The notes under the pieces were generated by a model, which did not search any database, had not been told where the DNA came from, and saw nothing but the letters and a program-made list of their open reading frames with translations. A DNA stretch of 64,000 nucleotides, from NCBI GenBank assembly GCA_002269645.1, contig NIVC01001967.1, positions 62,001 through 126,000 of the forward strand, written 5' to 3'. Of the stretch, positions 11,601-63,625 are shown one piece after another. Numbering within the stretch: position 1 is the stretch's first letter; each line of letters opens with the position of its first letter. The DNA comes from Macrostomum lignano. Lineage: Eukaryota. Made by a program: the position numbers and the translations under genes.

Positions 11601-12984
11601 ATAAGAATGCTTTAAATAGGAAAATGAAAAACGAAAATTTAATATGCATGTCGGTTTTCTTGAAAATAGACTGAGAAAGTTGTTAAGGCTTTATACGCAA
11701 TTTGAAGCGCATGACAGTTTCAATTTCTTTATGGAATTCAAAATATTTGCCTAAAGTAGAAGTATTTTATATATTTATATCCAGGCTCGCAAAGCAAGTA
11801 TTTAGAGCTTTCAAAAGACGCCTGTAAACTGTACAGGAGAAAGCCCTAATTACATCGTCAGCAATCCAGCCAAGGCGACTCGCTGTGAACATTGGACTCA
11901 TTTTAACGCAAAAATTACAACATTTAGATTGTTGTCATGCATGTAGAAAAGCAAGTTTTTAATGGGGTAAAACTACCTAATTAAAGCTCAATAATTAGCG
12001 CGCCAAGCCAACAGGACTTGGCTACACAGCATATTTTAATCTGTTTGCTGTAGCCGTATGCGAATGTTTGCTCGTCTCAGACGCCCAAGCGGCCAGACAA
12101 TGCGACGCCTCCGAAGTGTCCACAGGCGCACCTTGCAAGCTAAATGTAATTGGCGGGCGCCTCGGTGTCCGCCGCCTGATCACCTGGCATGAACTGATGC
12201 AGAAAAATTACACGGAAAAACTCTCTAAAGATGATTAGATTTTTCCTTTCAAAACTTTTTCAAAATCAGTCGAGCAACAACAAATTTAGCTAAAGCTGGT
12301 TTGTTTTATCGGAGACAAAACACCGGAGAAGCAGTCGATAATAGTGGCGCCATCTGCCCACCCTGTCGCCATACGACGCCTGATAATTTAATGGAGCGAT
12401 TCCAATCTCCTTAGTTGCAGTATAGACTTTCAATGAATCAGCATCATTCCCCGACTTCATAGATAGGCAACACCTCCCGGCAGGTCTTCATCAATGCTAG
12501 CCATATAGCTACCTGTTGAGGTGCCTCTCTTTGATTTTTATCGTTTCTCCTTAACAACGAGAAAGAGGAAACCAGCGGTCAGTTACTAAAAAAATCCGAG
12601 GATCCTTAGCTTCTTGCGTCCCTTCAATATCTGCTGTTCTAATCTTAGGGACCGAGGACAGAAGCTTTTAGGGGTAGAACAATCACCTGCTTATCTGATG
12701 TCCCCTGCGGCATGCGGAATAGCACCGACCTTATCTAAGGAAAACTTATCTAAGTCATGCTGCCAAGAGTATAATTGAGGATATTTTTTACAGAACTTTA
12801 CTAACAGCAAGATTTGCAGAATTCATTATTTTTTAAAACTTAAAGATTTTAACTTTCAAAAAGAGGTGCGCTTTTACATTTTACAGAGCCGTTCCTGCCT
12901 AACATGGCCAGAATAACAGTAGCCGCAGTTCTTTTTATGCGGAAATGAAACTGCACTAGTACACACATTCTTGAGTTTTGAGAC

Positions 12985-31819: not shown

Positions 31820-32520
31820 CCAAAACCAACAGTCCAACCAGTCCTAGCGAACAGTTTAACCAACAGTCCAACCAACGACAGTCCTAGCGAACAGTTTAAC
31901 CAACAGTCTAACCAACGACAGTCCTAGCGAACAGTTTAACCAACAGTCTAACCAACGACAGTCCTAGCGAACAGTTTAACCAACAGTCTAACCAACGACA
32001 GTCCTAGCGAACAGTTTAACCAACAGTCTAACCAACGACAGTCCTAGCGAACAGTTTAACCAACAGTCTAACCAACGACAGTCCTAACGAACAGTTTAAC
32101 CCAGTTTAACCAAAATTCCAACCAACGACAGTCCTAGCGAACAGTCTAACCAACAGTCTAACAACAGTCCAACCAACGACAGTCCTAGCGAACAGTCTAA
32201 CCAACAGTCTAACAACAGTCCAACCAACGACAGTCCTAGCGAACAGTCTAACCAACGACAGTCATAGCCAACAGTCAGAGCCAACAGTCTAACCAAAAGT
32301 CTAACAACAGTCCAACCAACGACAGTCCTAGCGAACAGTCTAACCAACAGTCTAACCAACAGTCTAACCAACAGTCTAACCAACGACAGTCCTAGCGAAC
32401 AGTCTAACCAACAGTCTAACCAACGACAGTCATAGCCAACAGTCAGAGCCAACAGTCTAACCAACAGTCTAACCAACGACAGTCATAGCCAACAGTCAGA
32501 GTCAACAGTCTAACCAACGG
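31820..32520. repeat. About 40-bp modular minisatellite built from AACAGTC blocks
   Basis: Unit CAACAGTCTAACCAACGACAGTCCTAGCGAACAGTTTAAC with shuffled variants. Confidence 0.9.
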
Positions 32521-33802
32521 TCCTAACCGGTTCGAATGACGAATACTCGTAGCTTTCTTGTCTACCATTTGAAGTACTGATAACCCATTGATACGCCTAG
32601 AGTAAATCACAGCAAAGTAAAGTGCACGCTTGCTATCCGAATGTAGGTGTGGGACTTAGCAAATTTTATTAAGCTACAACACACTGCGCGTAGTATATTG
32701 TTAGCAATCAGAAGTTAGTTAAGCAAGTGAAAAAAGTACACATGAATATGCTAATAAAATGGACATGGATAATAAGTATTAAAATGGCATGCAATACAAG
32801 CATGATGAAGAGAAATTTCACCCGTAGTTTGAAGTAAATTATCTGTTGAATTTTTGGGAAACGCAAGCTTTACAAATAAGCCAATAAAAAGCACAGGTAT
32901 TTACTGGTAGATATGAATATGAAGGGTGCAGAATCTATAGGCTGAGAAAATACTAACTTAAAGTAAAAAATCGAGATAAGCAAAACAAAGAGTTTAAAGT
33001 GCCGCAATGTACAGGTAGAATTTTGAGTTCCTCGAAGCGCTGGCAGTATATAAAAAATAGACGGATAGCCGAGCAGGCTCGGAACTCTTAGCTGCCGAAC
33101 AGGTAAACAGGTTTGCAAGTTGAAACTCGACTTGGGACAGTCAATTAGAATTCAAGTAGCTAAATAAGACCACTTTTAATGAAGCAGCTAATGTTGCACT
33201 TCATTGGCGTAGCTTTTTCACGCAGCACTCAATAACATAAAAATTAGGTATTAATTTTCAATATTATTCAATATTAAAGCCTATACAATGCTCAAATATG
33301 AGACGCATCAAACTGACCAAAATGTATATGAACTCAATAGGACCGAAACAACAATATTAATCAGCAGAAATTTAATCAGACAGCATAAATTACAAATTCA
33401 ACGGCCGTGAAAATACAGTAAATAAGCTAAATTTCAATTGCCACTCCTCCCCCTTAGTAGAAATATGGAAAAGGTAGTCAAATAGCTTACTATCGATAGA
33501 ATACATGTAGAAAATCGAGCTGCAGGTGATAATAGCTCGTATGTTCTGATGAAACTATAATTGAGTAGTAAATAACCTAACTAATTTGCTGCACTTGGTC
33601 CCCATAACTTACACAGGTCTTCAAAACAAGTTCATGCTTTTAGCCTACTCTCATCAGACATCAGACATCAGAACCGAGATTTCTTGTGGAGGACAAATTT
33701 TTCTCCCCGTGACTTAGTACCACTTTTTTACCCGAAATTTTGAACAAAGTCACATCTTTTTTGGTATCAATCAGCAAAAAGGTGTGTGATCTGTGCTCAG
33801 AG

Positions 33803-39121: not shown

Positions 39122-39760
39122 TCACACCTCAATCTGGGTCTGCTTTCCGCGCACAACCCTAGTAACATAGACGTAGAAGAAATCAGCATACAGAACTGTC
39201 TGCAGACAGCCGGCTATCACGGCTATGGCCTCAAAGTAGTCGTCAACAAAGTAGCGGTATATCCAATTAATAATGTAAAACGCTCGATAAGAGCCAAGAG
39301 CGAACAGGTAGTGCGATGTGATGGTATCAGCTGATCCAGTTTTGCTAATCAGAAACAGTTGCGGCAGGATAGCAACAGACTCCAGGTAGATACTGTAAGT
39401 CCAGAGAACCTCAACAACTGTTAGCTGGTGGTTCACTAGCACAGCCAATCCAGCTGCTGTAATTACCAGCCACTCGGCTCTGAAGCTGTCATGATTGCCA
39501 TCATAAGTAGCCCGATATTTGCAATAGACTAAGAACACTGTTAACCAAGTTAGCAAAACAAAGGCAATCTTCATTGTTGTGTTATATGCCGATATGTAAA
39601 CCGTGAAGAGGTCCAAGTAGCGCGTGGTAAAAACCAGGCCAAATAGAAACTGCGACTTGCCGGAAATGCCACTTACTGAGCGGGTTTGCCAGATTTTTGC
39701 CAGCAGAATAACAATGGCAAACAGATGGCTCATGTCGCCAATTAGTCGGAAAATGTTCAT
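39122..39760 (-). CDS. KDELR: ER lumen protein-retaining (KDEL) receptor, intronless, 212 aa
   Basis: MNIFRLIGDMSHL...GISGKSQ...FTTRYLDLF...WTYSIYLESVAILPQL...HYLFALGSYRAFYIINWIYRY...QTVLYADFFY. Confidence 0.97.
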   Translation of the reverse strand: MNIFRLIGDMSHLFAIVILLAKIWQTRSVSGISGKSQFLFGLVFTTRYLDLFTVYISAYNTTMKIAFVLLTWLTVFLVYCKYRATYDGNHDSFRAEWLVITAAGLAVLVNHQLTVVEVLWTYSIYLESVAILPQLFLISKTGSADTITSHYLFALGSYRAFYIINWIYRYFVDDYFEAIAVIAGCLQTVLYADFFYVYVTRVVRGKQTQIEV

Positions 39761-42526: not shown

Positions 42527-45480
42527 TTTTTTTAAAGCTTGCCAATTAATTAGGCCTAGTTAGATATCAGATTCAAAGTATCTTATCTTCAAAATAGGTA
42601 GGCCTCTAACTACCTAACAAAAGTGTAAGATAACAAAGTGTTTAGGAAATATATATCTAACAAGCTACTAGAAATTTTATGGATCCAAAAATGACTAAAA
42701 TTAGACCTGAAAACTGTAAAAAAGATAGGTTTTACTGATTTAGCATATCCATACAAAATACAAAAATTTATTTGAGCTTAGATCAAATAAAAGTAATACT
42801 ACTAGTATATAGTAGGCCTATTAATAACAGATATAGGCCGACAGATTCCAGGTTATTTTGTCTAATGACTTTTCGTCTAATGCCATATTGCTTAAGAGTT
42901 TTTTTCAGAGTTGTTTCATCTAACAGAAATGTGAAACAACTAGGAAGCAAGATAATGATTATTATGTGATGGAGAAGTAAGTTTACAGGCTATTCATCAG
43001 TGAGATATGATATATTAATGTATGCCTCCTTTTAACTTGTCCGACTTGGAATATTCTGACCATTATTCCAAGTTCTAACTTGTAATATGGGCATTCCTTC
43101 GTCTTACGATGCCTGCTATGCATTTCAATAGGATGGCCCCCATTTGTTTTACGATGCCTATAGAGAGCATATGGCATAGGCGTGATAGTGTAGTTTCTGT
43201 ATAATTTTCATTTTATGGCTATACATGTATTTTGTATTTCATATACTTGATGGATTATTGTTTATAAATGAAAGTCAAGCTATATATTCCATTTCGTTTT
43301 ACAATGCATTTGGTATAATTCAGTCTATTATTATAGGCATCGCAAAACGAAAGTGAGGGGGGGTTACTTTGGGTCCTTAAATTGGTTTACCACTTTTGTC
43401 TCCTCTTCTTTGGAGCAATTTTGGGAGTCTGTTGAACTTAGGCCTACTTGACTATTCTTTTCAAGCATTACAAATTGACTTCTGTGTTGCTTAATATTTA
43501 CTAGCTAGCTATAATATCTGTTTCATTTCGCGATGCCCCAGACATTGTAATTATTCATAAGGCATCGTAAAACGAAATGGTTTATAATGGCGCAATAGCT
43601 TCAGTTGCTAATGAGGGCGGCACAATGTTAAAGTGCGTGAGTCATGACATTTCTGTGGAAATACAGCCAGAAGTACAAACCAACTGTGTGGCTGAATTTA
43701 AGACCTCTGAAACACTGCACTCTTCCGTCGTAAAGTATACATTTTTAAAGCCTTCTTGCTTATTTAACATGGGCATCATAAGACAAAACAGATACTTTTT
43801 TGGGCATTGTAAGACGAAAGAATGCCATAATATGGTTAAATTATGAGTTGGAATATAATGGTTGGAATATTCTGATTGATTATTAAATACATTGCAAGGG
43901 TCTAAATATCATTCCAACTCTAATTTCAACTGGTGGTTATTTAGTACATTGCAAGAGTCTAAATGCCATTCCAACTCTTAATTCTGGCTGATTAGGCCTA
44001 TTTAATACGTTGCAAGAGTCTAAATATCATTCCAACCTAATTCACGTATGAAACATTCGCCGACACTTATTCAGACACTTCTACAGACACTTTAGTTTCT
44101 GTTGTACGGTTAGGAACAAGCATTAAATTTGTCTAGAACACTTCCTAATTCATATTTAATGAAATAAAGCAGTCCATGCATAGTTTTAATTTCGCAATTT
44201 TGTTTTTGTGCACTCGTTCCAGACTTTCAAATTATGGCTTTTATCGCGTAGTGTGCACATGCATCGTGTACAACGATTAGCTGCAGCGTGCTAAATAGTT
44301 CAATGAGGTATTAAAAGCGTACAAGGAGACGAACCTCAAGTATTTGTACATTTTAGTTGAAGTTAAAAGTTCAAGCTTTTAGTGAATCATTGGAAAATAA
44401 AACTATCCGTTTTAAATCGTGCAACATATTGTTTTGTCTCGGACATTTGTGACACTGTCACTTAGGGTTGCAAGGTTTTTTAAAAGAGAAACTGTTGCTT
44501 TTCCAATGCTGAAGTATTTGTGTTGTATGGATCAGGGTTTTTCGTCAAAATTTGGATGCATGTATACATCTAAACATGTATATGCAGATGGAAATATAAT
44601 AATCAAGATGCCATATATGTATATTTGCCAACATTTTCAGATTTTGTATAAAAATGATCAAGGTTGAAGATTACCCTATGGTATAACTGTTTTCTCCATT
44701 TTACTATTTCAAAGTGCCCACGTGAAGTTAGATTTAGCATGCCAGCCTTAAAAAATAAAAGAATCTACATAGTGTAGAATTGTATACTCTTTTATTTAAG
44801 GCTATATTATATTCCCAATATATTTGCTTAGATAAATCGAAAAGTATTTACTTTACTTGAAAAAAATAATGTTCACTACAAATATTTCTATGTAGAAACC
44901 AGGAAACATAAGCCTATCAAGTGTTATATAGAAATAAAGGATAAAGATATGGATAGAATATAATAAAGCCATTGTGGGCATTAAATATAAAACAAAAGAA
45001 TCATTTAAGGCAAAATTTGACAAAAAAGTGAATTTTTGGCATGCTCCAAGAAAAGAGGCTTATAATTTGAAATATTTTTGCTTTTGTTTGACAAAAAATA
45101 TGTATAGATTTATACTTTTGGGCAAGGTTTATTTTCCCTTAAAATTCTAATTGTAAATTTGCCAGTAAGCTTAAATATTGTTGTAAGTTGAAGCTCAAAT
45201 AAAATTAGTCTTAACTCCAATCTGACTTTCCAAAGTAAATCCTTAAATTATTTGTTACAATTGCTTTTAAAAACTTGCCATTTCATTCATTCATCAATCA
45301 AAATTTTGTTCTAGAAACTGATACCTATAGAAGGTTTATAGTTTTTAAGAAATCTGGTAACTAATGTCAGAGAAATATGTTTATGTAGGTTTTATATATA
45401 TCAACCTTATATATAAAAAAGGTTGCACACTGAGATTTAAATACAGCTTCTAACATGTGTGTCCAGAGGTGAGATTGTGG

Positions 45481-45893
45481 CCAACTGCACACCAATAGCA
45501 TACCAACTCTATACCAACTCCATACCAACTGCATACCAACTCCATACCAACATGCCAACTGCATACCAACTACATACCAACTGCATGCCAACTGCATACC
45601 AACTATATACCAACACCATACCAACTCCATACCAACTGCATACCAACTCCATACCAACATGCCAACTGCATACCAACACCATACCAACTCCATACCAACT
45701 GCATACCAACTCCATACCAACATGCCAACTGCATACCAACACCATACCAACTCCATACCAACTCCATACCAACATGCCAACTGCATACCAACACCATACC
45801 AACTCCATACCAACTGCATACCAACTCCATACCAACATTCCAACTGCATACCAACTCCATACCAACATACCAACTACATACCAACATGCCAAC
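45481..45893. repeat. CCAAC-core 8/11-bp tandem array in the left arm
   Basis: Units CCAACTGCATA, CCAACTCCATA, CCAACACCATA, CCAACATG. Confidence 0.95.
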
Positions 45894-45963
45894 TTATATT
45901 ATGCCACACTAAACGAAAACATGGCAAATTCATACCATTGTTTCATGTTTCAGGCTTCTTTGC

Positions 45964-46584
45964 ATGGCAGCGAAGATAAGTGTGAACGACACTTCTGAAG
46001 CCATTAGCGGTGACCAGTCAGGTGCTGCTGGTGCACAAGTTTTCTCTGCTGGAGGTGTTTTTGTGGAATCATGCATATCAACTAATCTCTTCGTGAATCA
46101 CTTTGATACAAGAACTTGTAAACTTAAGCCTTCTTGGTTCGATGAAGTCATTTATCCACTGTTAAGACAGCATGGTGAGTATTGTCAGTTCTCAGTTAAT
46201 AAGGTTAGACTGCGTGCATTTAAGCGCCATCGGAAGGCCTGCAGTTTTCTTTGGATGCGCCTAGTCTGTGCCGAAGGCTCTGGTTGCAGTATGGCATTCG
46301 TCGTCACCTTAAACAAGGCGCCGACTGATGGGCAGTCCTCTACACTGACGCTACGAAGAATCTCAGAGCACTCGGGGCATGATGTTCCATCAAGTTGTTC
46401 CTCTTATCGCTATCTGTGGCAACGAGGTTCACAAGAGTGCCGTAACTTTGTTTTATCTCAGGCCACCAACCCTGCTGCCAAGCCAACGCAGATCTATGTG
46501 AAAGCAATCGAGCTGTTTGGTAGCGAAGCACGCTCTCTATCTGCTGTCCGTACAACTATAATAAATAGTTGGATAGTAGGATAG
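45964..46584 (+). CDS. Truncated inverted copy of the transposase N-terminus (198 identical aa + 8 new aa)
   Basis: Translation matches ORF 48047-49831 through ...SAVRTT, then IINSWIVG*. It keeps the C102-x5-C108-x27-H136-x2-H139 zinc finger but none of the catalytic motifs. Expression is unknown. Confidence 0.6.
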   Translation: MAAKISVNDTSEAISGDQSGAAGAQVFSAGGVFVESCISTNLFVNHFDTRTCKLKPSWFDEVIYPLLRQHGEYCQFSVNKVRLRAFKRHRKACSFLWMRLVCAEGSGCSMAFVVTLNKAPTDGQSSTLTLRRISEHSGHDVPSSCSSYRYLWQRGSQECRNFVLSQATNPAAKPTQIYVKAIELFGSEARSLSAVRTTIINSWIVG

Positions 46585-47335
46585 AATATAATAAAGCCAT
46601 TGTGGGCATTAAATATAAAACAAAAGAATCATTTAAGGCAAAATTTGACAAAAAAGTGAATTTTTGGCATGCTCCAAGAAAAGAGGCTTATAATTTGAAA
46701 TATTTTTGCTTTTGTTTGACAAAAAATATGTATAGATTTATACTTTTGGGCAAGGTCTATTTTCTCTTAAAGTTCTAATTGTAAATTTGCCAGTAACAGA
46801 ATGTCTTTGCCTGTCATTAGGCAGTTAAGGAACAGCGCAAGTGGTGAATCTGCATCACACGATAGTGCGCTCGTTAATGTTGCAACCAAGCATTGACTGG
46901 CGGCATTGAAAGCACAATACGTGCCCGTCGGATTCGGTAGCCCCTCTGGCGACCGTGGCGATAGTGCAGGAAATGACACCGCAGTATCGGCGCGTCCTAA
47001 TAAAATTGGCGGTTAGGAACGAATTTACCATCAAAATGTCCCAGTGAACAGCCCAGTCACATCCATTTAACAACAAAAAATGGCGCCTCGACGTAAGCAA
47101 AAGAAACGAAACTTAAAAGTACAAATACTTATGGAAAGCAACATGTTGAATGCTAATTCATGGAAATTAGTAAAACTTAAAAGGGCATAATCGGTGACAC
47201 GAAAAGCAAAAAAATGATAGAATCATAAACTTTAGATCTCTAATCAGAGAACAATCACGCAACAGAAACGTGCATCATACGGAACATGTTGGATTGTGCA
47301 ATATAAATACCTGTGCCAGTCGAGACGGAGGAGGC

Positions 47336-49831
47336 CTACAAAGAGAGTTGATTTATAAGGTTGCACCTTACCCACAAGTTGCTGAGACATGGCACATACA
47401 TTACTACGACAGATCTAGTGGGAGACGCAAATTGTGGCGGAGTGAGTGTACGGCGCATACACAATACGTAAACCAATACAAGGGTTGACTGAAGGTATTT
47501 ATAAACTGAAAAAAATGCAATTTCATCACTCACAATTTGCTCATCTGGTAGGCTGTGACAGGTGGTATTCTGTGCTGTTGGTGCAGGTGAAATGACCGAG
47601 CGAGACCCACTTGCAGCAGGCGCAGCTAGAGTACAGGTCGTGGGTGCAATAGCAGGCCGAACCTGGACAATGACGGGCTGGCTGCCCGAGCGAGACCCAC
47701 TTGCAGCAGGCGCAGCTAGAGTACAGGTCGTGGGTGCAATAGCAGGCCGAACCTGGACAATGACGGGCTGGCTGCCCGAGCGAGACCCACTTGCAGCAGG
47801 CGCAGCTAGAGTACAGGTCGTGGGTGCAACGGCTGGCGGAATTGATAATGCCGATTGAATGAAGCTGGTTCTTCGTCTTTTTGAGGCTCCTGACCTATTC
47901 CAGGGATCTCCAGGTGGGTTTAACGGAGCATCAAAGCCACATTTGCGTCCTCTAGCACGCTTCGGGGGGCGAATTGGATGTTGCTCGTGCTGCAACCGCT
48001 TCAGTTGCAGTTTTACGGTTGTTAGTTGCGCACGGACAAATCTTGGTCACCTGAGCCGAGAACTTGGAGAAGGCAGTGCTTCGCTTTTGCACCAGCTGAA
48101 CCATGATTCAACAGCGGCGTTGGTCACGTGTGCGCTACGATTTCCTCCAAACACTGCCACACTCCAAAGAGGAAACAGTGGCATCCACTTTCGCAATACA
48201 ACCTGAACAGCCTGAGGGTAGAAAAGATTGTTCAGCACGCCATTGCCATCGCTTGCTGTCACTTCACTTGTCAAATCGTTGAAGTACTTCGCAAAAGGTG
48301 ATGAGGCTCGTAGTCCAGTCTCCAATTCAGCCAATGCGACGTCTTCTTGCACTGCATTTGAGACATTAGCAGAATCTTCAGCCACTTGGTTTTCATCAGG
48401 AATCTCCAACGAACTGAAGTCGAACCTACCATGTAGAATTTGTAAAGCCTTCAAAGTGGCAGGACCTACCCGCCTGGAGGTAAACACCTCGACCATTGCC
48501 TTCCAAACAGCTTGGGCGCAACGCAAAGTTTTCGACGTCACTAATAGTGCAAAAGAGAGCATGAACTCGCGATAAGTAACCTTATCGATTTTATCTGATG
48601 ACTTCAAAGTCCTGGCAACAGCGCGCAGCAAATGCGAGCTACAGATAAACACAACAGGAGATTCAGGTGGCTTCAGATCAGCACTCCGAAGTCGATTGTA
48701 CTGTACACGCAGGTAGTCTGTAACACAGGTCGTACATGCGGCTCGGAGAATACCATGAATGAAAACCCAGCTAAAGTCAGACACGTAGATTTGCGGACCT
48801 TTCTTGGGTAGTTCCCACAGTCCTATGTTGCAGTGACGAGCGAAATCTGCTAAAAAATGCATTAGCCAACTGGACACATTTTCCGAGCGCGTGACCTCCA
48901 TGATGCTTTCTGATACAGCTGTTCTCTTTATATCCGGGGTTGCAACAACAGCACTGCACAGAAGTACAGTGCTCGGCACGTTCTGGGTCTGTCGCACAAT
49001 TCCGCCGGTGGCGTCTAAGTGGAGAGGAGCAAGCTGATTGCCTTTCAGCACGTCGCGAAGCAAATCCAACTGCATGGAGGCACGGAGAATCACACCAACT
49101 GGTGCAACGTCAATCTTTTGGATATAGCCGCTAATGACTCCATCCTCGTTTATAGTCAACTTCCAGTCTTTCATTTGGAGTCTTAAATCTCTTATGTCGT
49201 CTGGAGACTTGTCGTCGGCAGCTTTTGTCCGACTAACAGTTGTACGGACAGCAGATAGAGAGCGTGCTTCGCTACCAAACAGCTCGATTGCTTTCACATA
49301 GATCTGCGTTGGCTTGGCAGCAGGGTTGGTGGCCTGAGATAAAACAAAGTTACGGCACTCTTGTGAACCTCGTTGCCACAGATAGCGATAAGAGGAACAA
49401 CTTGATGGAACATCATGCCCCGAGTGCTCTGAGATTCTTCGTAGCGTCAGTGTAGAGGACTGCCCATCAGTCGGCGCCTTGTTTAAGGTGACGACGAATG
49501 CCATACTGCAACCAGAGCCTTCGGCACAGACTAGGCGCATCCAAAGAAAACTGCAGGCCTTCCGATGGCGCTTAAATGCACGCAGTCTAACCTTATTAAC
49601 TGAGAACTGACAATACTCACCATGCTGTCTTAACAGTGGATAAATGACTTCATCGAACCAAGAAGGCTTAAGTTTACAAGTTCTTGTATCAAAGTGATTC
49701 ACGAAGAGATTAGTTGATATGCATGATTCCACAAAAACACCTCCAGCAGAGAAAACTTGTGCACCAGCAGCACCTGACTGGTCACCGCTAATGGCTTCAG
49801 AAGTGTCGTTCACACTTATCTTCGCTGCCAT
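47336..49831 (-). CDS. Mutator/NOF-like DDE transposase, 831 codons, interrupted by one in-frame TGA at 48047-48049
   Basis: N-terminal C-x5-C-x27-H-x2-H finger; LHLDATGG (D1), VSDFSW (D2), ICSSH (CxxH), TNAAVESWF (E). The frame stays open after the TGA (PRFVRAQL...) and joins ORF 47336-47995. Family assignment is from recalled motifs. Confidence 0.85.
47596..47829. repeat. 90-bp tandem repeat (2.6 copies) inside the transposase C-terminal frame
   Basis: Period 90 (47596, 47686, 47776), encoding APTTCTLAAPAASGSRSGSQPVIVQVRPAI. Confidence 0.92.
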
Positions 49832-49901
49832 GCAAAGAAGCCTGAAACATGAAACAATGGTATGAATTTGCCATGTTTTCGTTTAGTGTGGCATAATATA
49901 A

Positions 49902-50642
49902 GTTGGCATGTTGGTATGTAGTTGGTATGTTGGTATGGAGTTGGTATGCAGTTGGAATGTTGGTATGGAGTTGGTATGCAGTTGGTATGGAGTTGGTATG
50001 GTGTTGGTATGCAGTTGGCATGTTGGTATGGAGTTGGTATGGAGTTGGTATGGTGTTGGTATGCAGTTGGCATGTTGGTATGGAGTTGGTATGCAGTTGG
50101 TATGGAGTTGGTATGGTGTTGGTATGCAGTTGGCATGTTGGTATGGAGTTGGTATGCAGTTGGTATGGAGTTGGTATGGTGTTGGTATGCAGTTGGCATG
50201 TTGGTATGAAGTTGGTATGCAGTTGGCATGTTGGTATGGAGTTGGTATGCAGTTGGCATGTTGGTATGGAGTTGGTATGGAGTTGGTATGGTGTTGGTAT
50301 GCAGTTGGCATGTTGGTATGGAGTTGGTATGGTGTTGGTATGCAGTTGGCATGTTGGTATGGAGTTGGTATGCAGTTGGCATATAGTTGGTATGGAGTTG
50401 GTATGCAGTTGGCATGTTGGTATGGAGTTGGTATGCAGTTGGTATACAGTTGGCATGTTGGAATATAGTTCGTATGGAGTTGGTATGCAGTTGGTATACA
50501 GTTGGCATATTGGTATATAGTTGGTATGCAGTTGGCATGCAGTTGGTATGTAGTTGGTATGCAGTTGGCATGTTGGTATGGAGTTGGTATGCAGTTGGTA
50601 TGGAGTTGGTATAGAGTTGGTATGCTATTGGTGTGCAGTTGG
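49902..50642. repeat. GTTGG-core tandem array in the right arm (328 bp longer than its left counterpart)
   Basis: Reverse complement of the 45481-45893 array; 741 bp vs 413 bp. Confidence 0.95.
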
Positions 50643-52276
50643 CCACAATCTCACCTCTGGACACACATGTTAGAAGCTGTATTTAAATCTCAGTGTGCAA
50701 CCTTTTTTATATATAAGGTTGATATATATAAAACCTACATAAACATATTTCTCTGACATTAGTTACCAGATTTCTTAAAAACTATAAACCTTCTATAGGT
50801 ATCAGTTTCTAGAACAAAATTTTGATTGATGAATGAATGAAATGGCAAGTTTTTAAAAGCAATTGTAACAAATAATTTAAGGATTTACTTTGGAAAGTCA
50901 GATTGGAGTTAAGACTAATTTTATTTGAGCTTCAACTTACAACAATATTTAAGCTTACTGGCAAATTTACAATTAGAATTTTAAGGGAAAATAAACCTTG
51001 CCCAAAAGTATAAATCTATACATATTTTTTGTCAAACAAAAGCAAAAATATTTCAAATTATAAGCCTCTTTTCTTGGAGCATGCCAAAAATTCACTTTTT
51101 TGTCAAATTTTGCCTTAAATGATTCTTTTGTTTTATATTTAATGCCCACAATGGCTTTATTATATTCTATCCATATCTTTATCCTTTATTTCTATATAAC
51201 ACTTGATAGGCTTATGTTTCCTGGTTTCTACATAGAAATATTTGTAGTGAACATTATTTTTTTCAAGTAAAGTAAATACTTTTCGATTTATCTAAGCAAA
51301 TATATTGGGAATATAATATAGCCTTAAATAAAAGAGTATACAATTCTACACTATGTAGATTCTTTTATTTTTTAAGGCTGGCATGCTAAATCTAACTTCA
51401 CGTGGGCACTTTGAAATAGTAAAATGGAGAAAACAGTTATACCATAGGGTAATCTTCAACCTTGATCATTTTTATACAAAATCTGAAAATGTTGGCAAAT
51501 ATACATATATGGCATCTTGATTATTATATTTCCATCTGCATATACATGTTTAGATGTATACATGCATCCAAATTTTGACGAAAAACCCTGATCCATACAA
51601 CACAAATACTTCAGCATTGGAAAAGCAACAGTTTCTCTTTTAAAAAACCTTGCAACCCTAAGTGACAGTGTCACAAATGTCCGAGACAAAACAATATGTT
51701 GCACGATTTAAAACGGATAGTTTTATTTTCCAATGATTCACTAAAAGCTTGAACTTTTAACTTCAACTAAAATGTACAAATACTTGAGGTTCGTCTCCTT
51801 GTACGCTTTTAATACCTCATTGAACTATTTAGCACGCTGCAGCTAATCGTTGTACACGATGCATGTGCACACTACGCGATAAAAGCCATAATTTGAAAGT
51901 CTGGAACGAGTGCACAAAAACAAAATTGCGAAATTAAAACTATGCATGGACTGCTTTATTTCATTAAATATGAATTAGGAAGTGTTCTAGACAAATTTAA
52001 TGCTTGTTCCTAACCGTACAACAGAAACTAAAGTGTCTGTAGAAGTGTCTGAATAAGTGTCGGCGAATGTTTCATACGTGTCTAATTTAGCGACCTTCGT
52101 AACATTTAAAATGTTACCTACGTTCCAGGAAAGTTAGTTTTAACAAAACTAATTGCAAATAGTGCAATTATATTATAAAATTAGCGTTGCAATGTAAATT
52201 AGTAAGGTTGGTTTGTTTGCTCAAACCTTTCTTTCTTTACTGAGTTTTGTGTCGTTTCGTCTAAGGATTAGACGAA

Positions 52277-53739
52277 GGCCCTCGTTATTTGTCGGCTGGC
52301 AGTTTTCGGCTGGCAGTTGTCGGCTGGCAGTTGTCGGCTGGCAGTTGTCGGCTGGCAGTTGTCGGCTGGCAGTTGTCGGCTGGCAGTTTTCCGGCTGGCA
52401 GTTGGGGTGCTCCCGGACAAAACATTACATGGCAAAAACGACAGCAACAGGTGTATGCACCTCTTTAAGGGGTGCCAGACTATATGGAAGGCATCTGCAC
52501 CTCTTCAAGGGGTGCCAGACTAGATGTACAGCATCTGCACCTCTTCAAGGGGTGCCAGACTAGATAGACAGCATTTGCACATTTTGTCGGGGCATGTAAG
52601 CCTAAGATAAACAGCATGTGTTCTTTTTTTAAAATTGTACAATATATAAATATATACTCATATATAAGAGGAAATGAAGACGAAAAGTATATTTTTATAT
52701 ATATTTTTTCATTTATAGTATATGCAAAAAAATAAAATACAGGTGTATTAAAATAATGAATGAAATATAAAATTCTCCATGGCAGTGACAACACCATAGC
52801 CTAGCTATTTGTGAATGCCAAAATTTTGCCTAAAAATTCATGCAATCTATGGGGCGCATATATAGCTACATGTAGTATGGATCTCATTGAAACCTTTGAC
52901 CTAGTATATACATGTATATGTAGATGCTGAAATTACTTTCAGAAAAATTTTCCATATGAAAATTTGTGTTGGTATACTTGCATGAGTTGGTATAATTTAA
53001 TTTGCCATTGCAACGTCACGTCAACGCCTTCACGCGGGCCAGACTCACTTACCTCGGGCCACACACATCTATTACTGAAGCGTGCAAACCCGAAAACTTT
53101 AATCAGCTCATGCGCTACCTTCGGGCCACCCGCAGGGCTGAACTCTCCTTTCCAGAGAGCACCATAGCTGCTGGCGACACTGGGGGACCTCCCTGGGCGG
53201 CGCCAACCCTCCGTCCATAGCGACGCGTCGGCCGTTCAGGGACTAGCGGAATGGGCGCCCGCGCCTTCCCGCTGTGTCCCCTCCGGGACAGCCCTGCAGC
53301 TAAGTCAAGTAAGTCAAGAGCATAAACAATAAGTAAAATGTAGTTTAAAATGTGTGAAACTGAGGACCTATATACTAGAAGTTTGATTCTCCACTATTCA
53401 GATTAGTTTCTGGTCTTAAGCGTACATTATGATAGAATTTTCGAACTGTCTCTTAAATACTTTGCTGCTGCTAATTCTAATTTTAAACAATGTAGCAATA
53501 AAAACTGTAATAAGCGGTTTCCGCTTTTGCTTTTCAATAAAATATTAAATTTGGTCTAAGTCACTTATTTTTTTCCTTTGGCTTTAGGCGCAGCTATATG
53601 CCGACCAACCTGATAAATTACCGTTAGAGCCATTAGGCTATTTTTGGTATACCGGAGGAATAACGCCAGTGTTATTTATCCGGCGCCGGACAAATAACGC
53701 AAACGTTATATCTCCGGTACCGGACAAATAACGAGGGCC
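52277..53739. mobile_element. Non-autonomous Mutator-type element (1463 bp)
   Basis: 17-bp perfect TIR GGCCCTCGTTATTTGTC / GACAAATAACGAGGGCC; perfect 9-bp TSD TTAGACGAA (52268-52276, 53740-53748); internal 14-bp (GTCGGCTGGCAGTT) and about 40-bp tandem repeats. Confidence 0.9.
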
Positions 53740-57500: not shown

Positions 57501-58748
57501 AATAGTTTATCTCAGGGGCCAAGTTAGAAATCCAACTCATGGTTGTAGGTCTGATGAGAGAGGAGAGGAGAAAAATAGGAATGAGGAGGTGAGAAAAGAG
57601 AGTAGAAAAAATATAATAGGAGATATGAGAGAAGAGAGAAGGGAGATGACAAGATAAATGAGATAAATGAAAGGAGAGAAAACGGGAGAGAGGAGAGAAG
57701 AGAAGAGAGAAGGGGCAGCAAGGAGAGAACAGAGCAGAGGGCAGAAGATAGAAGAGATAAGATTGGAGATAGGACAGAGCAGAGAAGAGGAGAGAGGAGA
57801 AAAGAGGGGAGAGAACAGAGAAGAAGAGAGGAGAGAGAGGAGGAAGCAGAAGGAGAGAAGAGAGAAAGAAGCCGAGAAGAGGCATCAACCTTGAGCGAGT
57901 CGCATTGCTATTGTGAAGTCTCCAAAGACCTGAAGGCTTATAGTGGCTTTGCCGACCCCTGAGTTATACGATAAATTCTTCTAACTGAACCTGCGCAGGC
58001 CAAACTGAACGGCTCCTCAGTGGCAGCCAAGGTGATCAAGCAGCTCAGCGAGTCCTCGGTGCTCGGTCTGCACGAAGCCTCGGCCATGACCATAGCCGGC
58101 ATTCACCCAAACCTGGTGCGCTTCATCGGCCTTGTCAGCGAGCCGGCTGCTGAGTGCCTGTACCTGCTCACCGAGTTCTGCCCGGGCGGCTGCCTGCTGA
58201 ACTGGCTGCGCACCCGCGGCCAGGCCCAGCTCGACCAGCGCCAGCAGCTCAGCTTGGCTATCAACATTGCCAGCGCTGTGCAGTACCTGCAGCTCCGCCA
58301 GCTTATTCACCGAGACATCGCCTGTTGCAACGTGTTCATCACTGGTGAGCCGGGCATCGCCAAGCTGGGCGACTTCGGCATGAGCCGCCGCGTTGACCAG
58401 TGCGAGCGCACCGGCCGACTACCCGTGAAGTGGACGGCGCCCGAGGCCATTCTGAACAGCGAGTTCAGCTTCGCCTCGGACATCTGGTCTCTGGGCGTGT
58501 TTCTCTGGGAACTGTACTCGTTTGGCCGCCTGCCTTACCCGGGCATCCGCGTCAAGGATGTGGTCAGCGAGGTGGAGTCCGGCTACCAGCTGCCGCCGCC
58601 CAAAGACTGTCCGGTGCCCGTGTACGAGTGCATGCGGCGCACCTGGCAGCTCGACCCGCAGCAGCGCCCGTCCGCAGACGATGTCCTGGTGACTCTGAAT
58701 AGGGAGTACAATTTGCTGCTAGGCCGAGGCTGTTCTGCGGACAATTGA
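54556..58748 (+). CDS. CSK: Csk-like non-receptor tyrosine kinase (SH2 + kinase; no SH3 found), 3 exons, about 395 aa
   Basis: Exons 54556(acceptor 54534)-54753, 57001-57240, 57999-58748, all phase 0. SH2 PWYYG...FLIRESVNFPGDYTLCISHNGSVEHYRI; LDEEELFDTLEALVQHY...DGLC; IGRGDFAEV; VAAK; HRDIACCN; DFG; GRLPVKWTAPEA. Confidence 0.88.
55355..55635. mobile_element. hAT-type MITE (281 bp) in Csk intron 1
   Basis: Perfect 14-bp TIR CATACATGCACAAT; perfect 8-bp TSD GGTATTGC; homologous to 34670-34968. Confidence 0.9.
57560..57890. repeat. Purine-rich (AG) low-complexity tract in Csk intron 2
   Basis: About 330 bp almost entirely A/G on the + strand. Confidence 0.85.
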
Positions 58749-62302: not shown

Positions 62303-63625
62303 CTACCTAGGATCCAGGGAGAAGACAACCGCAGCATTCTTCAGCTGTTTCAGGGTCCTCACCAGAGCAGTCGTCCAGTAACACTCGTCGTACTCAATCC
62401 CGAGTCGAGCGCACACAGCCTTTATGTGTTTGCTCGCTTCCCTGAACCGGTGTCTTGGCATCAGCGGGAACAGGTGGTGCTCGATGTGGAAGTTCAGCCC
62501 GCCATGAAACCAGTCCATCCACACGGGGTTCTTTATGTTGATGTTGCACTCAACCTGCATTCGGTACCAGTTGGTCTCCTCGCAGACCTCCTTGCGCTCG
62601 TAGAAAGGCTTGCAGTAGTGATTTACCAATAGCTGGACATGGAGAATTCCTTCGAGCATCGACGCCAAAGAGTAAGTTACAAACACTTGAGTCCAAGTTG
62701 GAAGTTGGCACAAGAGAACGCTCACCCAGATAATGTGCAAAATCAGAGCCAGCCACACAATAGGTCTTCTTTCACTCACAATTGCTGCTATAACGATGTA
62801 TGGTCTTCCCACAATGATGCAGATGGGAAGGAACGTCCAATGCTGAATTGCAATCAGCGCGCGCTGCAGTCTCGTTGTAAAGAATGGGAACAGCTTTTTG
62901 TTTTGCGCCCACGATTCCTCTTTCATCTGCGGGTCGAAAAACCCATTCTCATAGTCGACCGTATTGGTGAGTGCGTGGTGGACGTAGTGCTCTTCCTGCC
63001 ACCAGAAGCTGTTGATGCCCACACCGAGCGTTCCACACGCGAGGCCGATCCAGTTGTCAATCTTGCGCTCGTGGAAGCCTTGGCTGTGCATGAAGTCGTG
63101 CATGAAGAATCCGCATTGCTGCCAAAACAGAGCGAGGCTGCAGCTGGCCAGACAGTGCCAGTACCAAGAGCTGCAGCCCACAACCAGAAACAACGTGAGA
63201 GCCAACAAAGAGGCTGCAAACGCCATCTTGCCGGCATACCACACTGCACTGGTTTGAAAGAAGCCCTGCTTGATGAAGAACTGGTGCAGCTCTGCGAACG
63301 CCTCAGCGGCAGGGTCGTCTTCGCTCAGTCTGTAGGTGGCTACAGGCCGCATGTGTTTGAGCACATCCTTGGTATGCAGCCCTTTGAACACGGGAGTAGC
63401 GTCTTTGCCAACAAACTGAGCAATCACAGAGCCGCCTGGGTGGTGCGGGATGAATTTGGAAATGTCGTACCATCCACCGTTGATTCCGATGAGCTTGGCA
63501 GTCGGATGGGAACTCATGTAAGCCTTGTACGCTTCGGTCCTCGTTGGAAGAATAAACTTTTTTGATTTTCGGTCTCTACAGACGCTTTGCGGCTCTGGAT
63601 AACCTCCGGAATCTCCATTGTCCAT
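62303..63625 (-). CDS. Cytochrome b5-fused membrane fatty-acid/sphingolipid desaturase, intronless, 440 aa
   Basis: b5 motif HPGG; His boxes HDFMH, HYVHH and HIEHH (WMDWFHGGLNFHIEHHLFPLMPRH). Confidence 0.93.
   Translation of the reverse strand: MDNGDSGGYPEPQSVCRDRKSKKFILPTRTEAYKAYMSSHPTAKLIGINGGWYDISKFIPHHPGGSVIAQFVGKDATPVFKGLHTKDVLKHMRPVATYRLSEDDPAAEAFAELHQFFIKQGFFQTSAVWYAGKMAFAASLLALTLFLVVGCSSWYWHCLASCSLALFWQQCGFFMHDFMHSQGFHERKIDNWIGLACGTLGVGINSFWWQEEHYVHHALTNTVDYENGFFDPQMKEESWAQNKKLFPFFTTRLQRALIAIQHWTFLPICIIVGRPYIVIAAIVSERRPIVWLALILHIIWVSVLLCQLPTWTQVFVTYSLASMLEGILHVQLLVNHYCKPFYERKEVCEETNWYRMQVECNINIKNPVWMDWFHGGLNFHIEHHLFPLMPRHRFREASKHIKAVCARLGIEYDECYWTTALVRTLKQLKNAAVVFSLDPR

What the first reader, a model, noticed from the sequence alone, without database searches (positions are those of the whole stretch)
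44043..52080. Foldback transposon whose inverted arms contain its own transposase 5' end: a possible built-in self-silencing module
Seen: the arms do not stop at ordinary TIR sequence. They include the upstream region, ATG and first 594 nt of the transposase (45964-46557 = reverse complement of 49238-49831), so two identical start regions face each other across a 2.7-kb spacer. Established: in maize, Mu killer is an inverted duplication of the MuDR 5' region whose hairpin transcript triggers heritable silencing of the family. Inference: convergent transcription, or read-through from either arm, would give a hairpin or duplex of at least 600 bp against the transposase, so one insertion could be both a transposase source and its own family-wide silencer.
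Basis: partly seen in the sequence, partly recalled or inferred. Interest (0 to 1): 0.85.

Follow-up and report, generated by a model that had tools for sequence, protein, structure and literature searches.

The report
Rearranged flatworm Mutator-like foldback transposon copy
This is one damaged, rearranged copy of an active Mutator-like "foldback" transposon of the flatworm Macrostomum lignano. DNA-break repair copied the transposase start region into the opposite arm, giving a maize Mu killer-like layout that could make silencing RNA, though nothing here shows that it does.

Summary
Arms 44043-46557 and 49238-52080 are perfectly complementary except for one 328-nt block inside an 11-nt tandem array. 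The left arm holds the leader, ATG and first 594 nt of the transposase CDS.

The window is Macrostomum lignano contig NIVC01001967.1. The protein is a Mutator/IS256-like DDE transposase with a WRKY-type zinc finger, judged by fold, motifs and 8-9-bp TSDs. It has no Pfam hit.

Six other copies share a 12.3-13.5-kb layout. Their long TIRs and arrays flank two convergent genes, the transposase and ORF2. None has the inverted CDS piece.

The window copy is a derived dead end:
- It lacks 4.3 kb, including ORF2.
- It has TTA>TGA at codon 595.
- Its TSD is degenerate.
- Its junctions fit repair: a 1,628-nt insertion with a 21-nt templated-looking filler, flanked by a 218-nt direct repeat.

The best explanation is a break in the left arm repaired by copying the opposite arm past the TIR boundary. 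This is the same arm-to-arm copying that keeps the TIRs identical in every copy.

"Built-in self-silencing module" is not supported as a family design. A Mu killer-like by-product (antisense or hairpin RNA, or a truncated DNA-binding protein) remains possible but untested.

The parts
44035..44043 (.). Left flank, degenerate target-site duplication (ACCTAATTC). The insertion sits at the end of a 57-61-nt tandem repeat.
   Evidence: 6/9 in-register matches to 52080-52088. The other copies have perfect 8- or 9-bp TSDs; tandem repeat at 43877-44045.
44044..45480 (+). Left arm, outer non-repetitive TIR part. The terminus reads ACGTATGAAACATTCGCC.
   Evidence: 100% identical to the right arm, and 25-33 mismatches to the arms of the six other copies.
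45481..45885 (+). Left-arm 11-nt tandem array (unit CCAACTCCATA, about 38 units). It is 328 nt shorter than the right array.
45896..45963 (+). Inverted copy of the 68-nt transposase leader (inner edge of array to ATG).
45964..46557 (+). Inverted duplicate of transposase codons 1-198, which include the WRKY-type zinc-finger DNA-binding domain. The ORF runs on to 46584 (206 aa, tail IINSWIVG, then stop).
46558..46578 (.). 21-nt junction filler ATAATAAATAGTTGGATAGTA. It is made of short motifs (ATAATAAA, GGATAG) that recur in the adjacent sequence.
   Evidence: It matches neither the CDS nor the arm, which fits templated-insertion end joining.
46579..46796 (+). 218-nt remnant of the old left arm. 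It is a direct repeat of 44951-45168 with 3 mismatches and carries window-lineage variants.
   Evidence: (D4, spacing 1628; I7).
46797..47335 (-). 3' region downstream of the transposase ORF. Its left edge (46796/46797) is the deletion junction J3, with an AA microhomology. It corresponds to canonical position L001:13214.
47336..49831 (-). Transposase gene. The ORF reaches codon 594, then in-frame TGA (48047-48049), then open to 47336. Catalytic residues are D273 (49013-49015), D352 (48776-48778) and E575 (48107-48109). C397xxH400 is also present.
47593..47862 (-). In-frame 90-nt (30-aa) coding minisatellite, about 3 units here. It has 5 units in L001/L002, 6 in L004, and at least 8 in L005 within the 900 residues printed (its 988-codon ORF implies about 9).
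   Evidence: (D5).
49832..49899 (-). Transposase leader (right arm).
49901..50642 (-). Right-arm 11-nt tandem array (about 70 units).
50643..52079 (-). Right arm, outer non-repetitive TIR part and terminus.
52080..52088 (.). Right flank, degenerate TSD partner (GTCTAATTT).

Best explanation
This is an 8,036-bp, non-autonomous, rearranged copy of a roughly 13-kb Mutator-like (IS256/MULE-type DDE, WRKY zinc finger) foldback element of Macrostomum lignano.

The canonical element has two long arms. Each arm is 1.33 kb of unique TIR plus a 0.6-2.9-kb array of 11-nt repeats. Each arm abuts a short leader and an inward-reading gene: the transposase on one side and ORF2 on the other. This is a MuDR-like convergent layout.

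The window copy arose in two steps.
- Step 1: an internal deletion of about 4.3 kb joined position 45168 of the distal arm to the transposase 3' region (junction 46796/46797, AA microhomology). It removed ORF2, a UCH-like fragment, the distal array and the inner TIR.
- Step 2: a double-strand break occurred at about 44950/44951 in that shortened arm. The outer end invaded the homologous opposite arm and was extended inward for 1,607 nt. Synthesis ran past the end of arm homology, through the array and leader into the first 594 nt of the transposase CDS. The end was then released and joined to the other break end with a 21-nt templated-looking filler.

This predicts a 1,628-nt insertion flanked by a 218-nt direct repeat, which is what is seen. 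The same arm-to-arm copying keeps the two TIRs of every copy identical. Here the tract overshot the boundary.

Consequences are inferred, not shown. The left arm now carries a second copy of whatever promoter drives the transposase, pointing inward. It should therefore give a short mRNA for a 206-aa DNA-binding-only protein and/or read-through RNA antisense to the transposase gene. A transcript that crosses both arms would fold into a perfect stem of at least 594 bp. These are accidental by-products of repair. They could feed siRNA or piRNA silencing as Mu killer does, but they are not a designed feature of the family.
For: Organism and locus: P0001 is 98% identical and from M. lignano. L007 is 100% identical to window 29122-49760 on NIVC01001967.1.

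Canonical layout: six copies share it and none has an inverted CDS piece. ORF2 and a UCH fragment sit where the window has the deletion. In canonical copies, arm homology stops at the inner edge of the arrays.

Repair scars:
- The 218-nt direct repeat has a spacing of 1628, which equals the 1607 new nt plus the 21-nt filler.
- The filler is built from motifs that recur in the adjacent sequence.
- Junction J3 has an AA microhomology.
- The left arm equals the right arm minus one 328-nt block inside the array.

Lineage: the 218-nt remnant shares window-specific variants, so it comes from this copy's own lineage. At one site it keeps the ancestral T where both arms now carry C. That means the arms were homogenised after the remnant was separated from them.

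Concerted arms: there are 0-2 mismatches per 1.33 kb within every element, against 18-33 between lineages. Copy-specific substitutions and indels are shared by both arms.

Degeneracy: TTA>TGA at codon 595 occurs only in the window copy. The ORF is intact over 868-988 codons in L001, L002, L004 and L005. TSDs are perfect in all six others and 6/9 in the window.

Transposase class:
- 629 relatives were found, with invariant or near-invariant D, D, E, CxxH and N..E......K positions.
- The AF2 model has pLDDT 76.7.
- The best Foldseek PDB hit is the IS256-family ISCth4 transposase (E 3.5e-4, prob 1.0). The N-terminal domain matches the WRKY18 DNA-binding domain (prob 0.99).

Precedents: Galileo extends its TIRs by recruiting adjacent internal sequence in inverted orientation (PMC3573991). 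Mu killer has both TIRs from the mudrA end plus inverted mudrA 5' sequence (PMC3440606).
Against: The order and number of repair events is inferred from one end product. A single complex gap-repair event with several template switches, or aberrant transposition between sister chromatids, would give the same sequence.

The 6/9 TSD is more decayed than the roughly 1-2% divergence seen elsewhere in the copy, and the model does not explain this.

Perfect arm identity could be inflated by consensus polishing of a repeat in a long-read assembly.

No read data, RNA data or second assembly was available. Promoter location is inferred only from the logic that an autonomous element must carry its promoter between terminus and ATG.

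AATAAA motifs at 46560 and 46590 lie at the end of the 206-aa ORF. They may stop left-arm transcripts early and limit any antisense or hairpin RNA.

Membership of the Mutator superfamily rests on fold and motifs. No Pfam MULE or Transposase_mut model matched.
Confidence: 0.72

Rival explanations
1. Mu killer-like trans-silencer. Convergent or read-through transcription of this copy yields hairpin or duplex RNA of at least 594 bp. This is processed into siRNAs or piRNAs that repress the intact family copies.
For: The structure meets the two sequence-level hallmarks of Mu killer: both TIRs come from the transposase-proximal end, and the transposase 5' end is duplicated in inverted orientation (PMC3440606). 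Inverted Ac fragments made by aberrant transposition are transcribed into dsRNA and siRNAs that silence Ac (bioRxiv 10.1101/2020.01.07.897926). M. lignano has an active piRNA pathway that targets transposons (PMC4604429). The family has targets worth silencing: four copies with intact ORFs and perfect TSDs. The duplicated CDS segment is about 98.5% identical to those copies.
Against: There are no transcription or small-RNA data. AATAAA motifs lie directly after the left-arm ORF. The family looks recently active despite this locus: L001-L005 differ by 0-4 nt per 1.33 kb and have perfect TSDs. Canonical copies already have convergent genes, so convergent transcription alone is evidently tolerated. 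No gene model is annotated on this copy, whereas all six others have one.
Confidence: 0.15
2. Built-in, selected self-limiting module. The extended arm is an evolved design of the element that couples transposase supply to family-wide silencing.
For: Only the structure itself supports this. Arm identity has been maintained after the rearrangement, shown by one derived substitution present in both arms.
Against: Only 1 of 7 copies has it. That copy has a nonsense codon, a 4.3-kb deletion and a degenerate TSD. The junctions are typical repair scars. Arm identity is maintained in all copies regardless of content.
Confidence: 0.03
3. Truncated-transposase repressor (P-element KP-like). The left arm expresses a 206-aa protein made of the N-terminal WRKY-type DNA-binding region only. 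It occupies the transposase binding sites in the arms and inhibits transposition at the protein level.
For: The intact ORF 45964-46584 has the same leader and upstream arm as the real gene. Residues 74-132 model as a WRKY-like sheet, and the catalytic domain starts at about residue 235. AATAAA lies 8 nt after the stop codon. DNA-binding-only transposase fragments are known repressors of P elements; this last point is my own background knowledge and was not checked here.
Against: There is no expression or binding evidence. The binding sites are unknown. The ORF end is an accident of the filler sequence. One copy among several intact ones would have to compete with full-length protein.
Confidence: 0.08
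4. Assembly artefact: a chimeric long read or a mis-join between family copies created the inverted CDS segment.
For: The element is repeat-rich with 100% identical arms in a long-read assembly of a highly repetitive genome. Only one assembly of the locus is available.
Against: It is not a simple palindrome around one point. There is a 2.7-kb unique centre, a 21-nt filler, a diverged 218-nt remnant, and unequal arrays. All parts carry the same private lineage variants, which differ from the six other copies. The locus lies more than 100 kb inside a 217-kb contig.
Confidence: 0.07
5. Two head-to-head insertions of the same lineage were fused by a deletion, or the structure came from alternative (sister-chromatid) transposition, rather than from break repair within one element.
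For: The imperfect TSD (6/9; my estimate is roughly a 2-4% chance match in AT-rich DNA) would be expected if the two ends came from different insertions. Alternative transposition is known to create inverted transposon duplications (bioRxiv 10.1101/2020.01.07.897926).
Against: This needs more events. The 218-nt direct repeat and the exact 1,628-nt arithmetic are predicted by the single-break model. The left flank continues the local tandem-repeat unit up to the insertion point, and the central 6 bp of the TSD match.
Confidence: 0.1

Closest known systems
Mu killer (Muk) of maize, a rearranged MuDR
   Same: It belongs to the same transposon superfamily. Both TIRs derive from the transposase-proximal end, and the 5' part of the transposase gene is present in inverted duplicate (PMC3440606). 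It is a one-off rearranged derivative, not the canonical element.
   Different: Muk has about 1.3 kb of mudrA on both halves and no complete gene. Here one half is a nearly full-length (nonsense-mutated) gene and the other holds 594 nt. Muk's silencing activity is shown genetically, with associated transcripts characterised (PMC3440606) and hairpin-derived siRNAs proposed (Slotkin 2005, cited there). Nothing functional is shown here. The host is an animal, with piRNA and RNAi pathways rather than plant RdDM.
Galileo (P superfamily, Drosophila) copies with extended or recombinant TIRs
   Same: Both are foldback-like elements with long, internally repetitive TIRs. In some Galileo copies, sequence lying just inside one TIR reappears in inverted orientation next to the other TIR and lengthens the TIR. 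This is attributed to recombination or DSB repair between close inverted repeats (PMC3573991).
   Different: Galileo belongs to a different superfamily. The Galileo examples quoted recruit the non-coding F1/F2 regions. Here the recruited piece includes the start codon and 198 codons of the transposase.
Mutator/Foldback-type elements: Drosophila FB, Tm1 of root-knot nematodes, Rehavkus
   Same: They share composite long TIRs made of variable numbers of short tandem repeats, TSDs of 8-10 bp, and a Mutator-like transposase (Tm1: PMC3169594). Rehavkus has a 9-bp TSD, a minisatellite near the transposase C-terminus and a PHD finger (PMC6446971). This family has a 90-nt C-terminal minisatellite, and 9 of 50 relatives carry PHD fingers.
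   Different: The M. lignano protein itself has no detectable PHD finger and no Pfam MULE match. The arms here are much longer (2.0-4.3 kb including arrays). There is a second convergent gene (ORF2). The family's phylogenetic position was not determined.
Ac/Ds composite insertions made by alternative transposition (maize)
   Same: In both, aberrant transposon-associated repair or replication creates inverted duplications of transposon sequence. In maize, these are transcribed from the element's own or a flanking promoter into dsRNA and siRNAs that silence the family (bioRxiv 10.1101/2020.01.07.897926).
   Different: These are hAT elements in plants. Their structure arises from two separate elements and re-replication, and it is functionally demonstrated.

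Membership tests
Mutator-like / IS256 superfamily DDE transposase | RNase-H-fold catalytic core with a D, D, E triad and a C/DxxH motif after the second D | tested here: met
   D273, D352, E575 and C397xxH400 are invariant or near-invariant across 50 relatives. The best structural match is the ISCth4 (IS256 family) transposase, E 3.5e-4, prob 1.0.
Mutator-like / IS256 superfamily DDE transposase | Sequence match to curated MULE or Transposase_mut profiles | tested here: not met
   There was no Pfam hit for the window ORF, for P0001, or for any of 50 relatives at E<=0.01. A PDB sequence search was also negative.
Mutator-like / IS256 superfamily DDE transposase | N-terminal WRKY/GCM1-type (FLYWCH-like) zinc-finger DNA-binding domain | tested here: met
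   Foldseek matched the AtWRKY18 DNA-binding domain (prob 0.99, TM-target 0.62). The pattern C102-x5-C108...H136-x2-H139 is present.
Mutator-like / IS256 superfamily DDE transposase | Long TIRs and TSDs of 8-11 bp | tested here: met
   TSDs are perfect 8 bp in four copies and perfect 9 bp in two. The TIRs have at least 1.33 kb of unique sequence. The window copy itself shows only a 6/9 match.
Foldback-type element | Very long TIRs built largely of short tandem repeats whose number varies between copies and between arms | tested here: met
   The 11-nt arrays span about 400 and 740 nt in the window and 0.6-2.9 kb in the other copies. They are unequal between the arms of each copy.
Rehavkus group | 9-bp TSD, PHD finger in the transposase, and a minisatellite near the C-terminus or before the 3' TIR | tested here: inconclusive
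   A 90-nt in-frame minisatellite is present. TSDs are 8-9 bp. PHD fingers occur in 9 of 50 relatives but not in this protein. No phylogeny against Repbase Rehavkus was possible.
Mu killer-type silencer locus | Both TIRs from the transposase-proximal end, plus an inverted duplication of the transposase 5' region | tested here: met
   The comparison is with PMC3440606.
Mu killer-type silencer locus | Transcription into hairpin or antisense RNA, and derived small RNAs | not testable with these tools
   No RNA-seq or small-RNA data were accessible. There is only the inference that the arm carries the promoter.
Mu killer-type silencer locus | Dominant, heritable trans-silencing of active family members | not testable with these tools
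   This needs genetics. Indirectly, the family shows signs of very recent activity.
Autonomous element (transposase source) | Uninterrupted full-length transposase ORF and complete gene complement of the family | tested here: not met
   TGA at codon 595 replaces TTA, and the intact ORFs elsewhere run 868-988 codons. ORF2 and the adjacent 3 kb are deleted.

The most novel reading that the evidence does not exclude
This locus is a natural, animal counterpart of maize Mu killer. A repair-generated inverted duplication of the transposase 5' end inside a Mutator-like element makes hairpin or antisense RNA from its own duplicated promoter. That RNA seeds siRNA/piRNA silencing of a still-active family in a flatworm. 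More generally, the arm-to-arm copying that keeps foldback TIRs identical would now and then overshoot and produce the family's own silencer. That would be an intrinsic route from activity to silencing for long-TIR transposons.
Probability: 0.12. Interest if true: 0.65.

Novelty: new member of a known kind. Interest (0 to 1): 0.38.

Why it matters
How a host first recognises an active DNA transposon is still known from only a few cases, chiefly Mu killer and the Ac composite insertions, both in maize. This locus has the same architecture in an animal that has experimental piRNA and knockdown data. It sits beside at least four apparently intact, recently transposed copies of the family. The idea is therefore directly testable with existing kinds of data: small-RNA and stranded RNA libraries, and SNPs private to this copy.

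Two further points stand on their own. The family is a well-preserved Mutator-like foldback element with a MuDR-like two-gene layout and strong concerted evolution of its arms. The window copy also gives a nucleotide-level picture of how TIRs can be extended by repair synthesis.

If the locus turns out to be transcriptionally silent, it is simply one more rearranged dead transposon.

Tried and rejected
- Pfam scans of the 594-aa ORF, the downstream ORF and P0001 gave nothing relevant ([error], 7, 27).
- PDB sequence searches with the protein and with a 50-sequence profile gave only noise.
- The word-indexed protein search found only P0001 and one JGI protein. Repeating it with the profile found only P0001.
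- Names of the ten best relatives were uninformative: 'hypothetical' proteins from M. lignano and Mytilus, plus unnamed metagenome or Logan proteins.
- Exact-product look-ups of the window's 594-aa and 206-aa ORFs found no called gene. No second assembly of this locus could be reached. The flanking KDEL-receptor look-up returned only the window's own contig.
- A 7-bp TSD reading (CCTAATT/TCTAATT with termini CACG...CGTG) was considered and dropped. The other copies fix the termini at ACGT...ACGT with 8-9-bp TSDs.
- The idea that the 218-nt repeat came from another family copy was rejected because it carries this lineage's private variants.
- The ACCAAC-rich array at 31824-32528 was checked. 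It is an unrelated 12/40-nt satellite.
- The sigma-70 promoter and terminator scan, the Rfam search and the prokaryote, phage and plasmid collections were not used. The sequence is from an animal genome.

Full report
OBSERVATION

The inverted arms are real. One search reports two perfectly complementary arm pairs: 44043-45613 with 50510-52080 (1571 nt), and 45595-46557 with 49238-50200 (963 nt). One search shows the 2515-nt left arm equals the reverse complement of the 2843-nt right arm, apart from one 328-nt block (about 50189-50509). That block lies inside a tandem array of 11-nt units.

The minus-strand ORF 49831..48047 (594 aa) and the plus-strand ORF 45964..46584 (206 aa) share their first 198 codons. 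The 24-nt terminus occurs only at the two ends, with 0 matches expected by chance.

ORGANISM AND LOCUS

The protein is 98% identical to Macrostomum lignano BOX15_Mlig004567g1. A look-up of the flanking KDEL-receptor gene (39122-39760) returned a locus 100% identical to window 29122-49760, on contig NIVC01001967.1 of GCA_002269645.1. The window corresponds to about 62,001-126,000 of that 217-kb contig. No other assembly of the locus was reachable.

WHAT THE PROTEIN IS

Pfam and PDB sequence searches gave nothing. An exhaustive HMMER search found 629 relatives at E<=1e-3. In an alignment of 50 of them, the following positions are invariant or near-invariant: the D of LHLDATGG, the D of YVSDFSW, C..H in CSSHLL, and N..E......K in TNAAVESWFSWCK. 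In window numbering these are D273, D352, C397/H400 and E575.

An AlphaFold model built from that alignment is confident in the core (mean pLDDT 76.7, most of residues 30-620 above 90). Its best PDB match is the IS256-family ISCth4 transposase (E 3.5e-4, prob 1.0), followed by Hermes. The N-terminal sheet matches a WRKY DNA-binding domain (prob 0.99).

IS256 is the prokaryotic counterpart of eukaryotic Mutator-like elements, and WRKY/GCM1-type fingers are typical of MULE transposases. Both statements are my own background knowledge. Some relatives carry PHD fingers (9/50), Ulp1 (6/50), UCH, OTU or YqaJ domains. I therefore call the protein a Mutator/IS256-like DDE transposase on fold, motifs, TSD and TIR evidence. 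The failure to match the curated MULE profiles remains a caveat.

THE FAMILY

The 90% cluster of P0001 has five members on six contigs. I fetched all six loci. All share one layout, given here in gene orientation:
- terminus ACGTATGAAAC...;
- 1.33 kb of unique TIR;
- an 11-nt array of 0.6-2.9 kb;
- a 68-nt leader;
- a single-exon transposase ORF;
- about 3 kb holding a UCH-like fragment (Pfam UCH 5.5e-8) and a minus-strand, repeat-rich ORF2 of 299-379 aa;
- a second 11-nt array (about 0.9-1.6 kb);
- the other TIR.

Arm homology ends at the inner edge of the arrays. Each array abuts a different leader and an inward-reading gene. This is the convergent two-gene layout known from MuDR.

The elements are 12.3-13.5 kb long. 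TSDs are perfect: 8 bp in four copies and 9 bp in two. The ORF is intact in L001, L002, L004 and L005 (868-988 codons, differing in the number of an in-frame 30-aa repeat) and frameshifted in L003 and L006. L001-L005 differ by only 0-4 substitutions per 1.33 kb of TIR, so the family has been active very recently. None of the six has an inverted copy of the CDS 5' end.

CONCERTED ARMS

Within each of the seven copies the two arms differ by 0-2 substitutions per 1.33 kb. Between lineages the difference is much larger: L006 differs from L001-L005 by 18-21, and the window copy differs from all others by 25-33.

Copy-specific substitutions and indels are present in both arms. Examples are L004's two substitutions, L006's 7-nt insertion, and the window's extra segment of about 66 nt at 44578-44646, mirrored in the right arm. 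The arms are therefore continually homogenised against each other. Perfect arm identity is a property of the family, not of this copy.

HOW THE WINDOW COPY DIFFERS

- The window copy lacks canonical positions 13215-17535 in L001 numbering. This covers the UCH fragment, ORF2, the distal array and the inner roughly 200 nt of the distal unique TIR. Position 45168-equivalent of the arm is joined to the transposase 3' region at 46796/46797, with an AA microhomology.
- Codon 595 is TGA, where the five copies compared at that codon (L001-L005) read TTA. The stop falls 20 codons after the catalytic E and removes about 240 C-terminal residues, which include basic, NLS-like stretches.
- The 9-mers flanking the element match at only 6 of 9 positions.
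- Between 45168 and 46797 lie the arm extension (45169-46557), a 21-nt filler (ATAATAAATAGTTGGATAGTA, built of motifs that recur in the adjacent sequence), and a 218-nt direct repeat of 44951-45168 (family D4, spacing 1628).

The 218-nt repeat carries this lineage's private variants but differs from the present arms at three sites. At one of these it keeps the ancestral T where both arms now have C.

MECHANISM OF ORIGIN (INFERRED)

The arithmetic fits a simple model. A copy already shortened by the J3 deletion suffered a double-strand break at about 44950/44951. The outer end, still holding 908 nt of TIR, invaded the homologous opposite arm. It was extended inward for 1,607 nt, across the array and leader and into CDS nt 594. 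It was then released and joined to the other break end with 21 nt of templated-looking filler.

This predicts a 1,628-nt insertion bounded by a direct repeat running from the break point to J3 (218 nt), and that is exactly what is seen. The 328-nt difference between the arrays is a single slippage event.

The derived C shared by both arms, against the T in the remnant, shows that arm homogenisation continued after the event, or that the arm was re-copied later. So the extended palindrome is not necessarily brand new. A one-step gap repair with several template switches, or aberrant sister-chromatid transposition, cannot be excluded.

TIR extension by recruitment of adjacent internal sequence has been described for Galileo and was attributed there to recombination or DSB repair between the close inverted repeats (PMC3573991).

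WHAT IT LIKELY DOES (INFERRED)

An autonomous element must carry its transposase promoter between terminus and ATG. The left arm duplicates that whole interval, so it should fire inward.

One possible product is a short mRNA for a 206-aa protein that contains only the WRKY-type DNA-binding region. AATAAA motifs sit at 46560 and 46590, at the end of that ORF.

The other possibility is read-through RNA antisense to the whole transposase gene. A transcript that crosses both arms would fold into a perfect stem of at least 594 bp.

This is the architecture of Mu killer, which has both TIRs from the mudrA end and about 1.3 kb of mudrA inverted (PMC3440606). It also resembles the Ac composite insertions, whose inverted repeats are transcribed into dsRNA and siRNAs (bioRxiv 10.1101/2020.01.07.897926). 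M. lignano has a piRNA pathway directed at transposons (PMC4604429).

None of this could be tested here. Three observations weigh against a strong effect:
- the family looks recently active;
- canonical copies already tolerate convergent genes;
- this copy has no annotated gene model, whereas the six others have one.

VERDICT

The label 'foldback transposon with the transposase 5' end in its arms' is correct. The reading as a built-in self-silencing module, and as a simultaneous transposase source, is not supported. This is one degenerate, repair-scarred derivative of a family whose canonical members lack the feature.

A Mu killer-like or KP-like side effect remains an open and testable possibility. 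I put it at roughly 0.1-0.2.

In kind, this is a new member of known classes: rearranged inverted-duplication transposon derivatives and TIR extension in foldback-like elements. It occurs in a Mutator-like family that appears to be uncharacterised, since every source names these proteins only as hypothetical.

One point remains unexplained. The 6/9 TSD is far more decayed than the rest of the copy.

Noticed in passing
L001:13574-14089 (+) and L001:14932-16071 (-); same positions in L002-L005: Canonical copies carry about 3 kb that the window copy lacks. It holds a ubiquitin C-terminal hydrolase (UCH/USP) fragment (Pfam UCH 5.5e-8) downstream of the transposase, and a convergent, repeat-rich ORF2 of 299-379 aa with no recognisable domain. 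Some distant relatives of the transposase are fused to UCH, Ulp1 or OTU protease domains.
   Followed up: partly
window 44044-45439 / 50666-52079 and both arms of L001-L006: There is strong concerted evolution of the two arms. Arms differ by 0-2 nt within an element but by 18-33 nt between lineages. Copy-specific substitutions and indels are shared by both arms. Consensus polishing could inflate this effect, but the shared indels argue that it is real.
   Followed up: partly
window 47593-47862 (minus-strand coding); L001-L005 about 11985-12770: An in-frame 90-nt (30-aa) minisatellite lies in the transposase C-terminal region. It has about 3 units in the window, 5 in L001/L002, 6 in L004, and at least 8 in L005 within the printed 900 residues (about 9 implied by its 988-codon ORF). 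A C-terminal minisatellite is listed as a Rehavkus trait (PMC6446971).
   Followed up: partly
window 44035-44043 and 52080-52088: The flanking 9-mers (ACCTAATTC / GTCTAATTT) match at only 6/9 positions, with the mismatches at the edges. The six other copies have perfect TSDs. This is unexplained. The insertion lies at the end of a 57-61-nt tandem repeat (43877-44045).
   Followed up: partly
window 44578-44646 and mirrored 51477-51545: A segment of about 66-69 nt is present in both arms of the window copy and absent from both arms of all six other copies (BLAST breaks).
   Followed up: no
window 52289-52404 and 52456-52580: Directly right of the element there are 8 copies of a 14-nt unit (TTGTCGGCTGGCAG) and about 3 copies of a 40-nt unit. 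They may be the subterminal repeats of another element.
   Followed up: no
window 31824-32528: A 12/40/51-nt satellite (AACCAACAGTCT-type), about 700 bp long, is unrelated to the element's 11-nt array despite a shared CCAAC motif.
   Followed up: yes
P0007 / P0155-P0157 (M. lignano); P0020 (Mytilus coruscus): A second, 40%-identical family of the same transposase type exists in M. lignano. Relatives also occur in a mussel and in many unnamed metagenome or Logan assemblies.
   Followed up: no
window 39122-39760 (-), 58020-58748 (+), 62303-63625 (-): Flanking host genes include a single-exon KDEL receptor (PF00810), a protein-kinase-like exon, and a 440-aa ORF. By eye the 440-aa ORF looks like a cytochrome-b5-fused fatty-acid desaturase. 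The last two were not tested.
   Followed up: no
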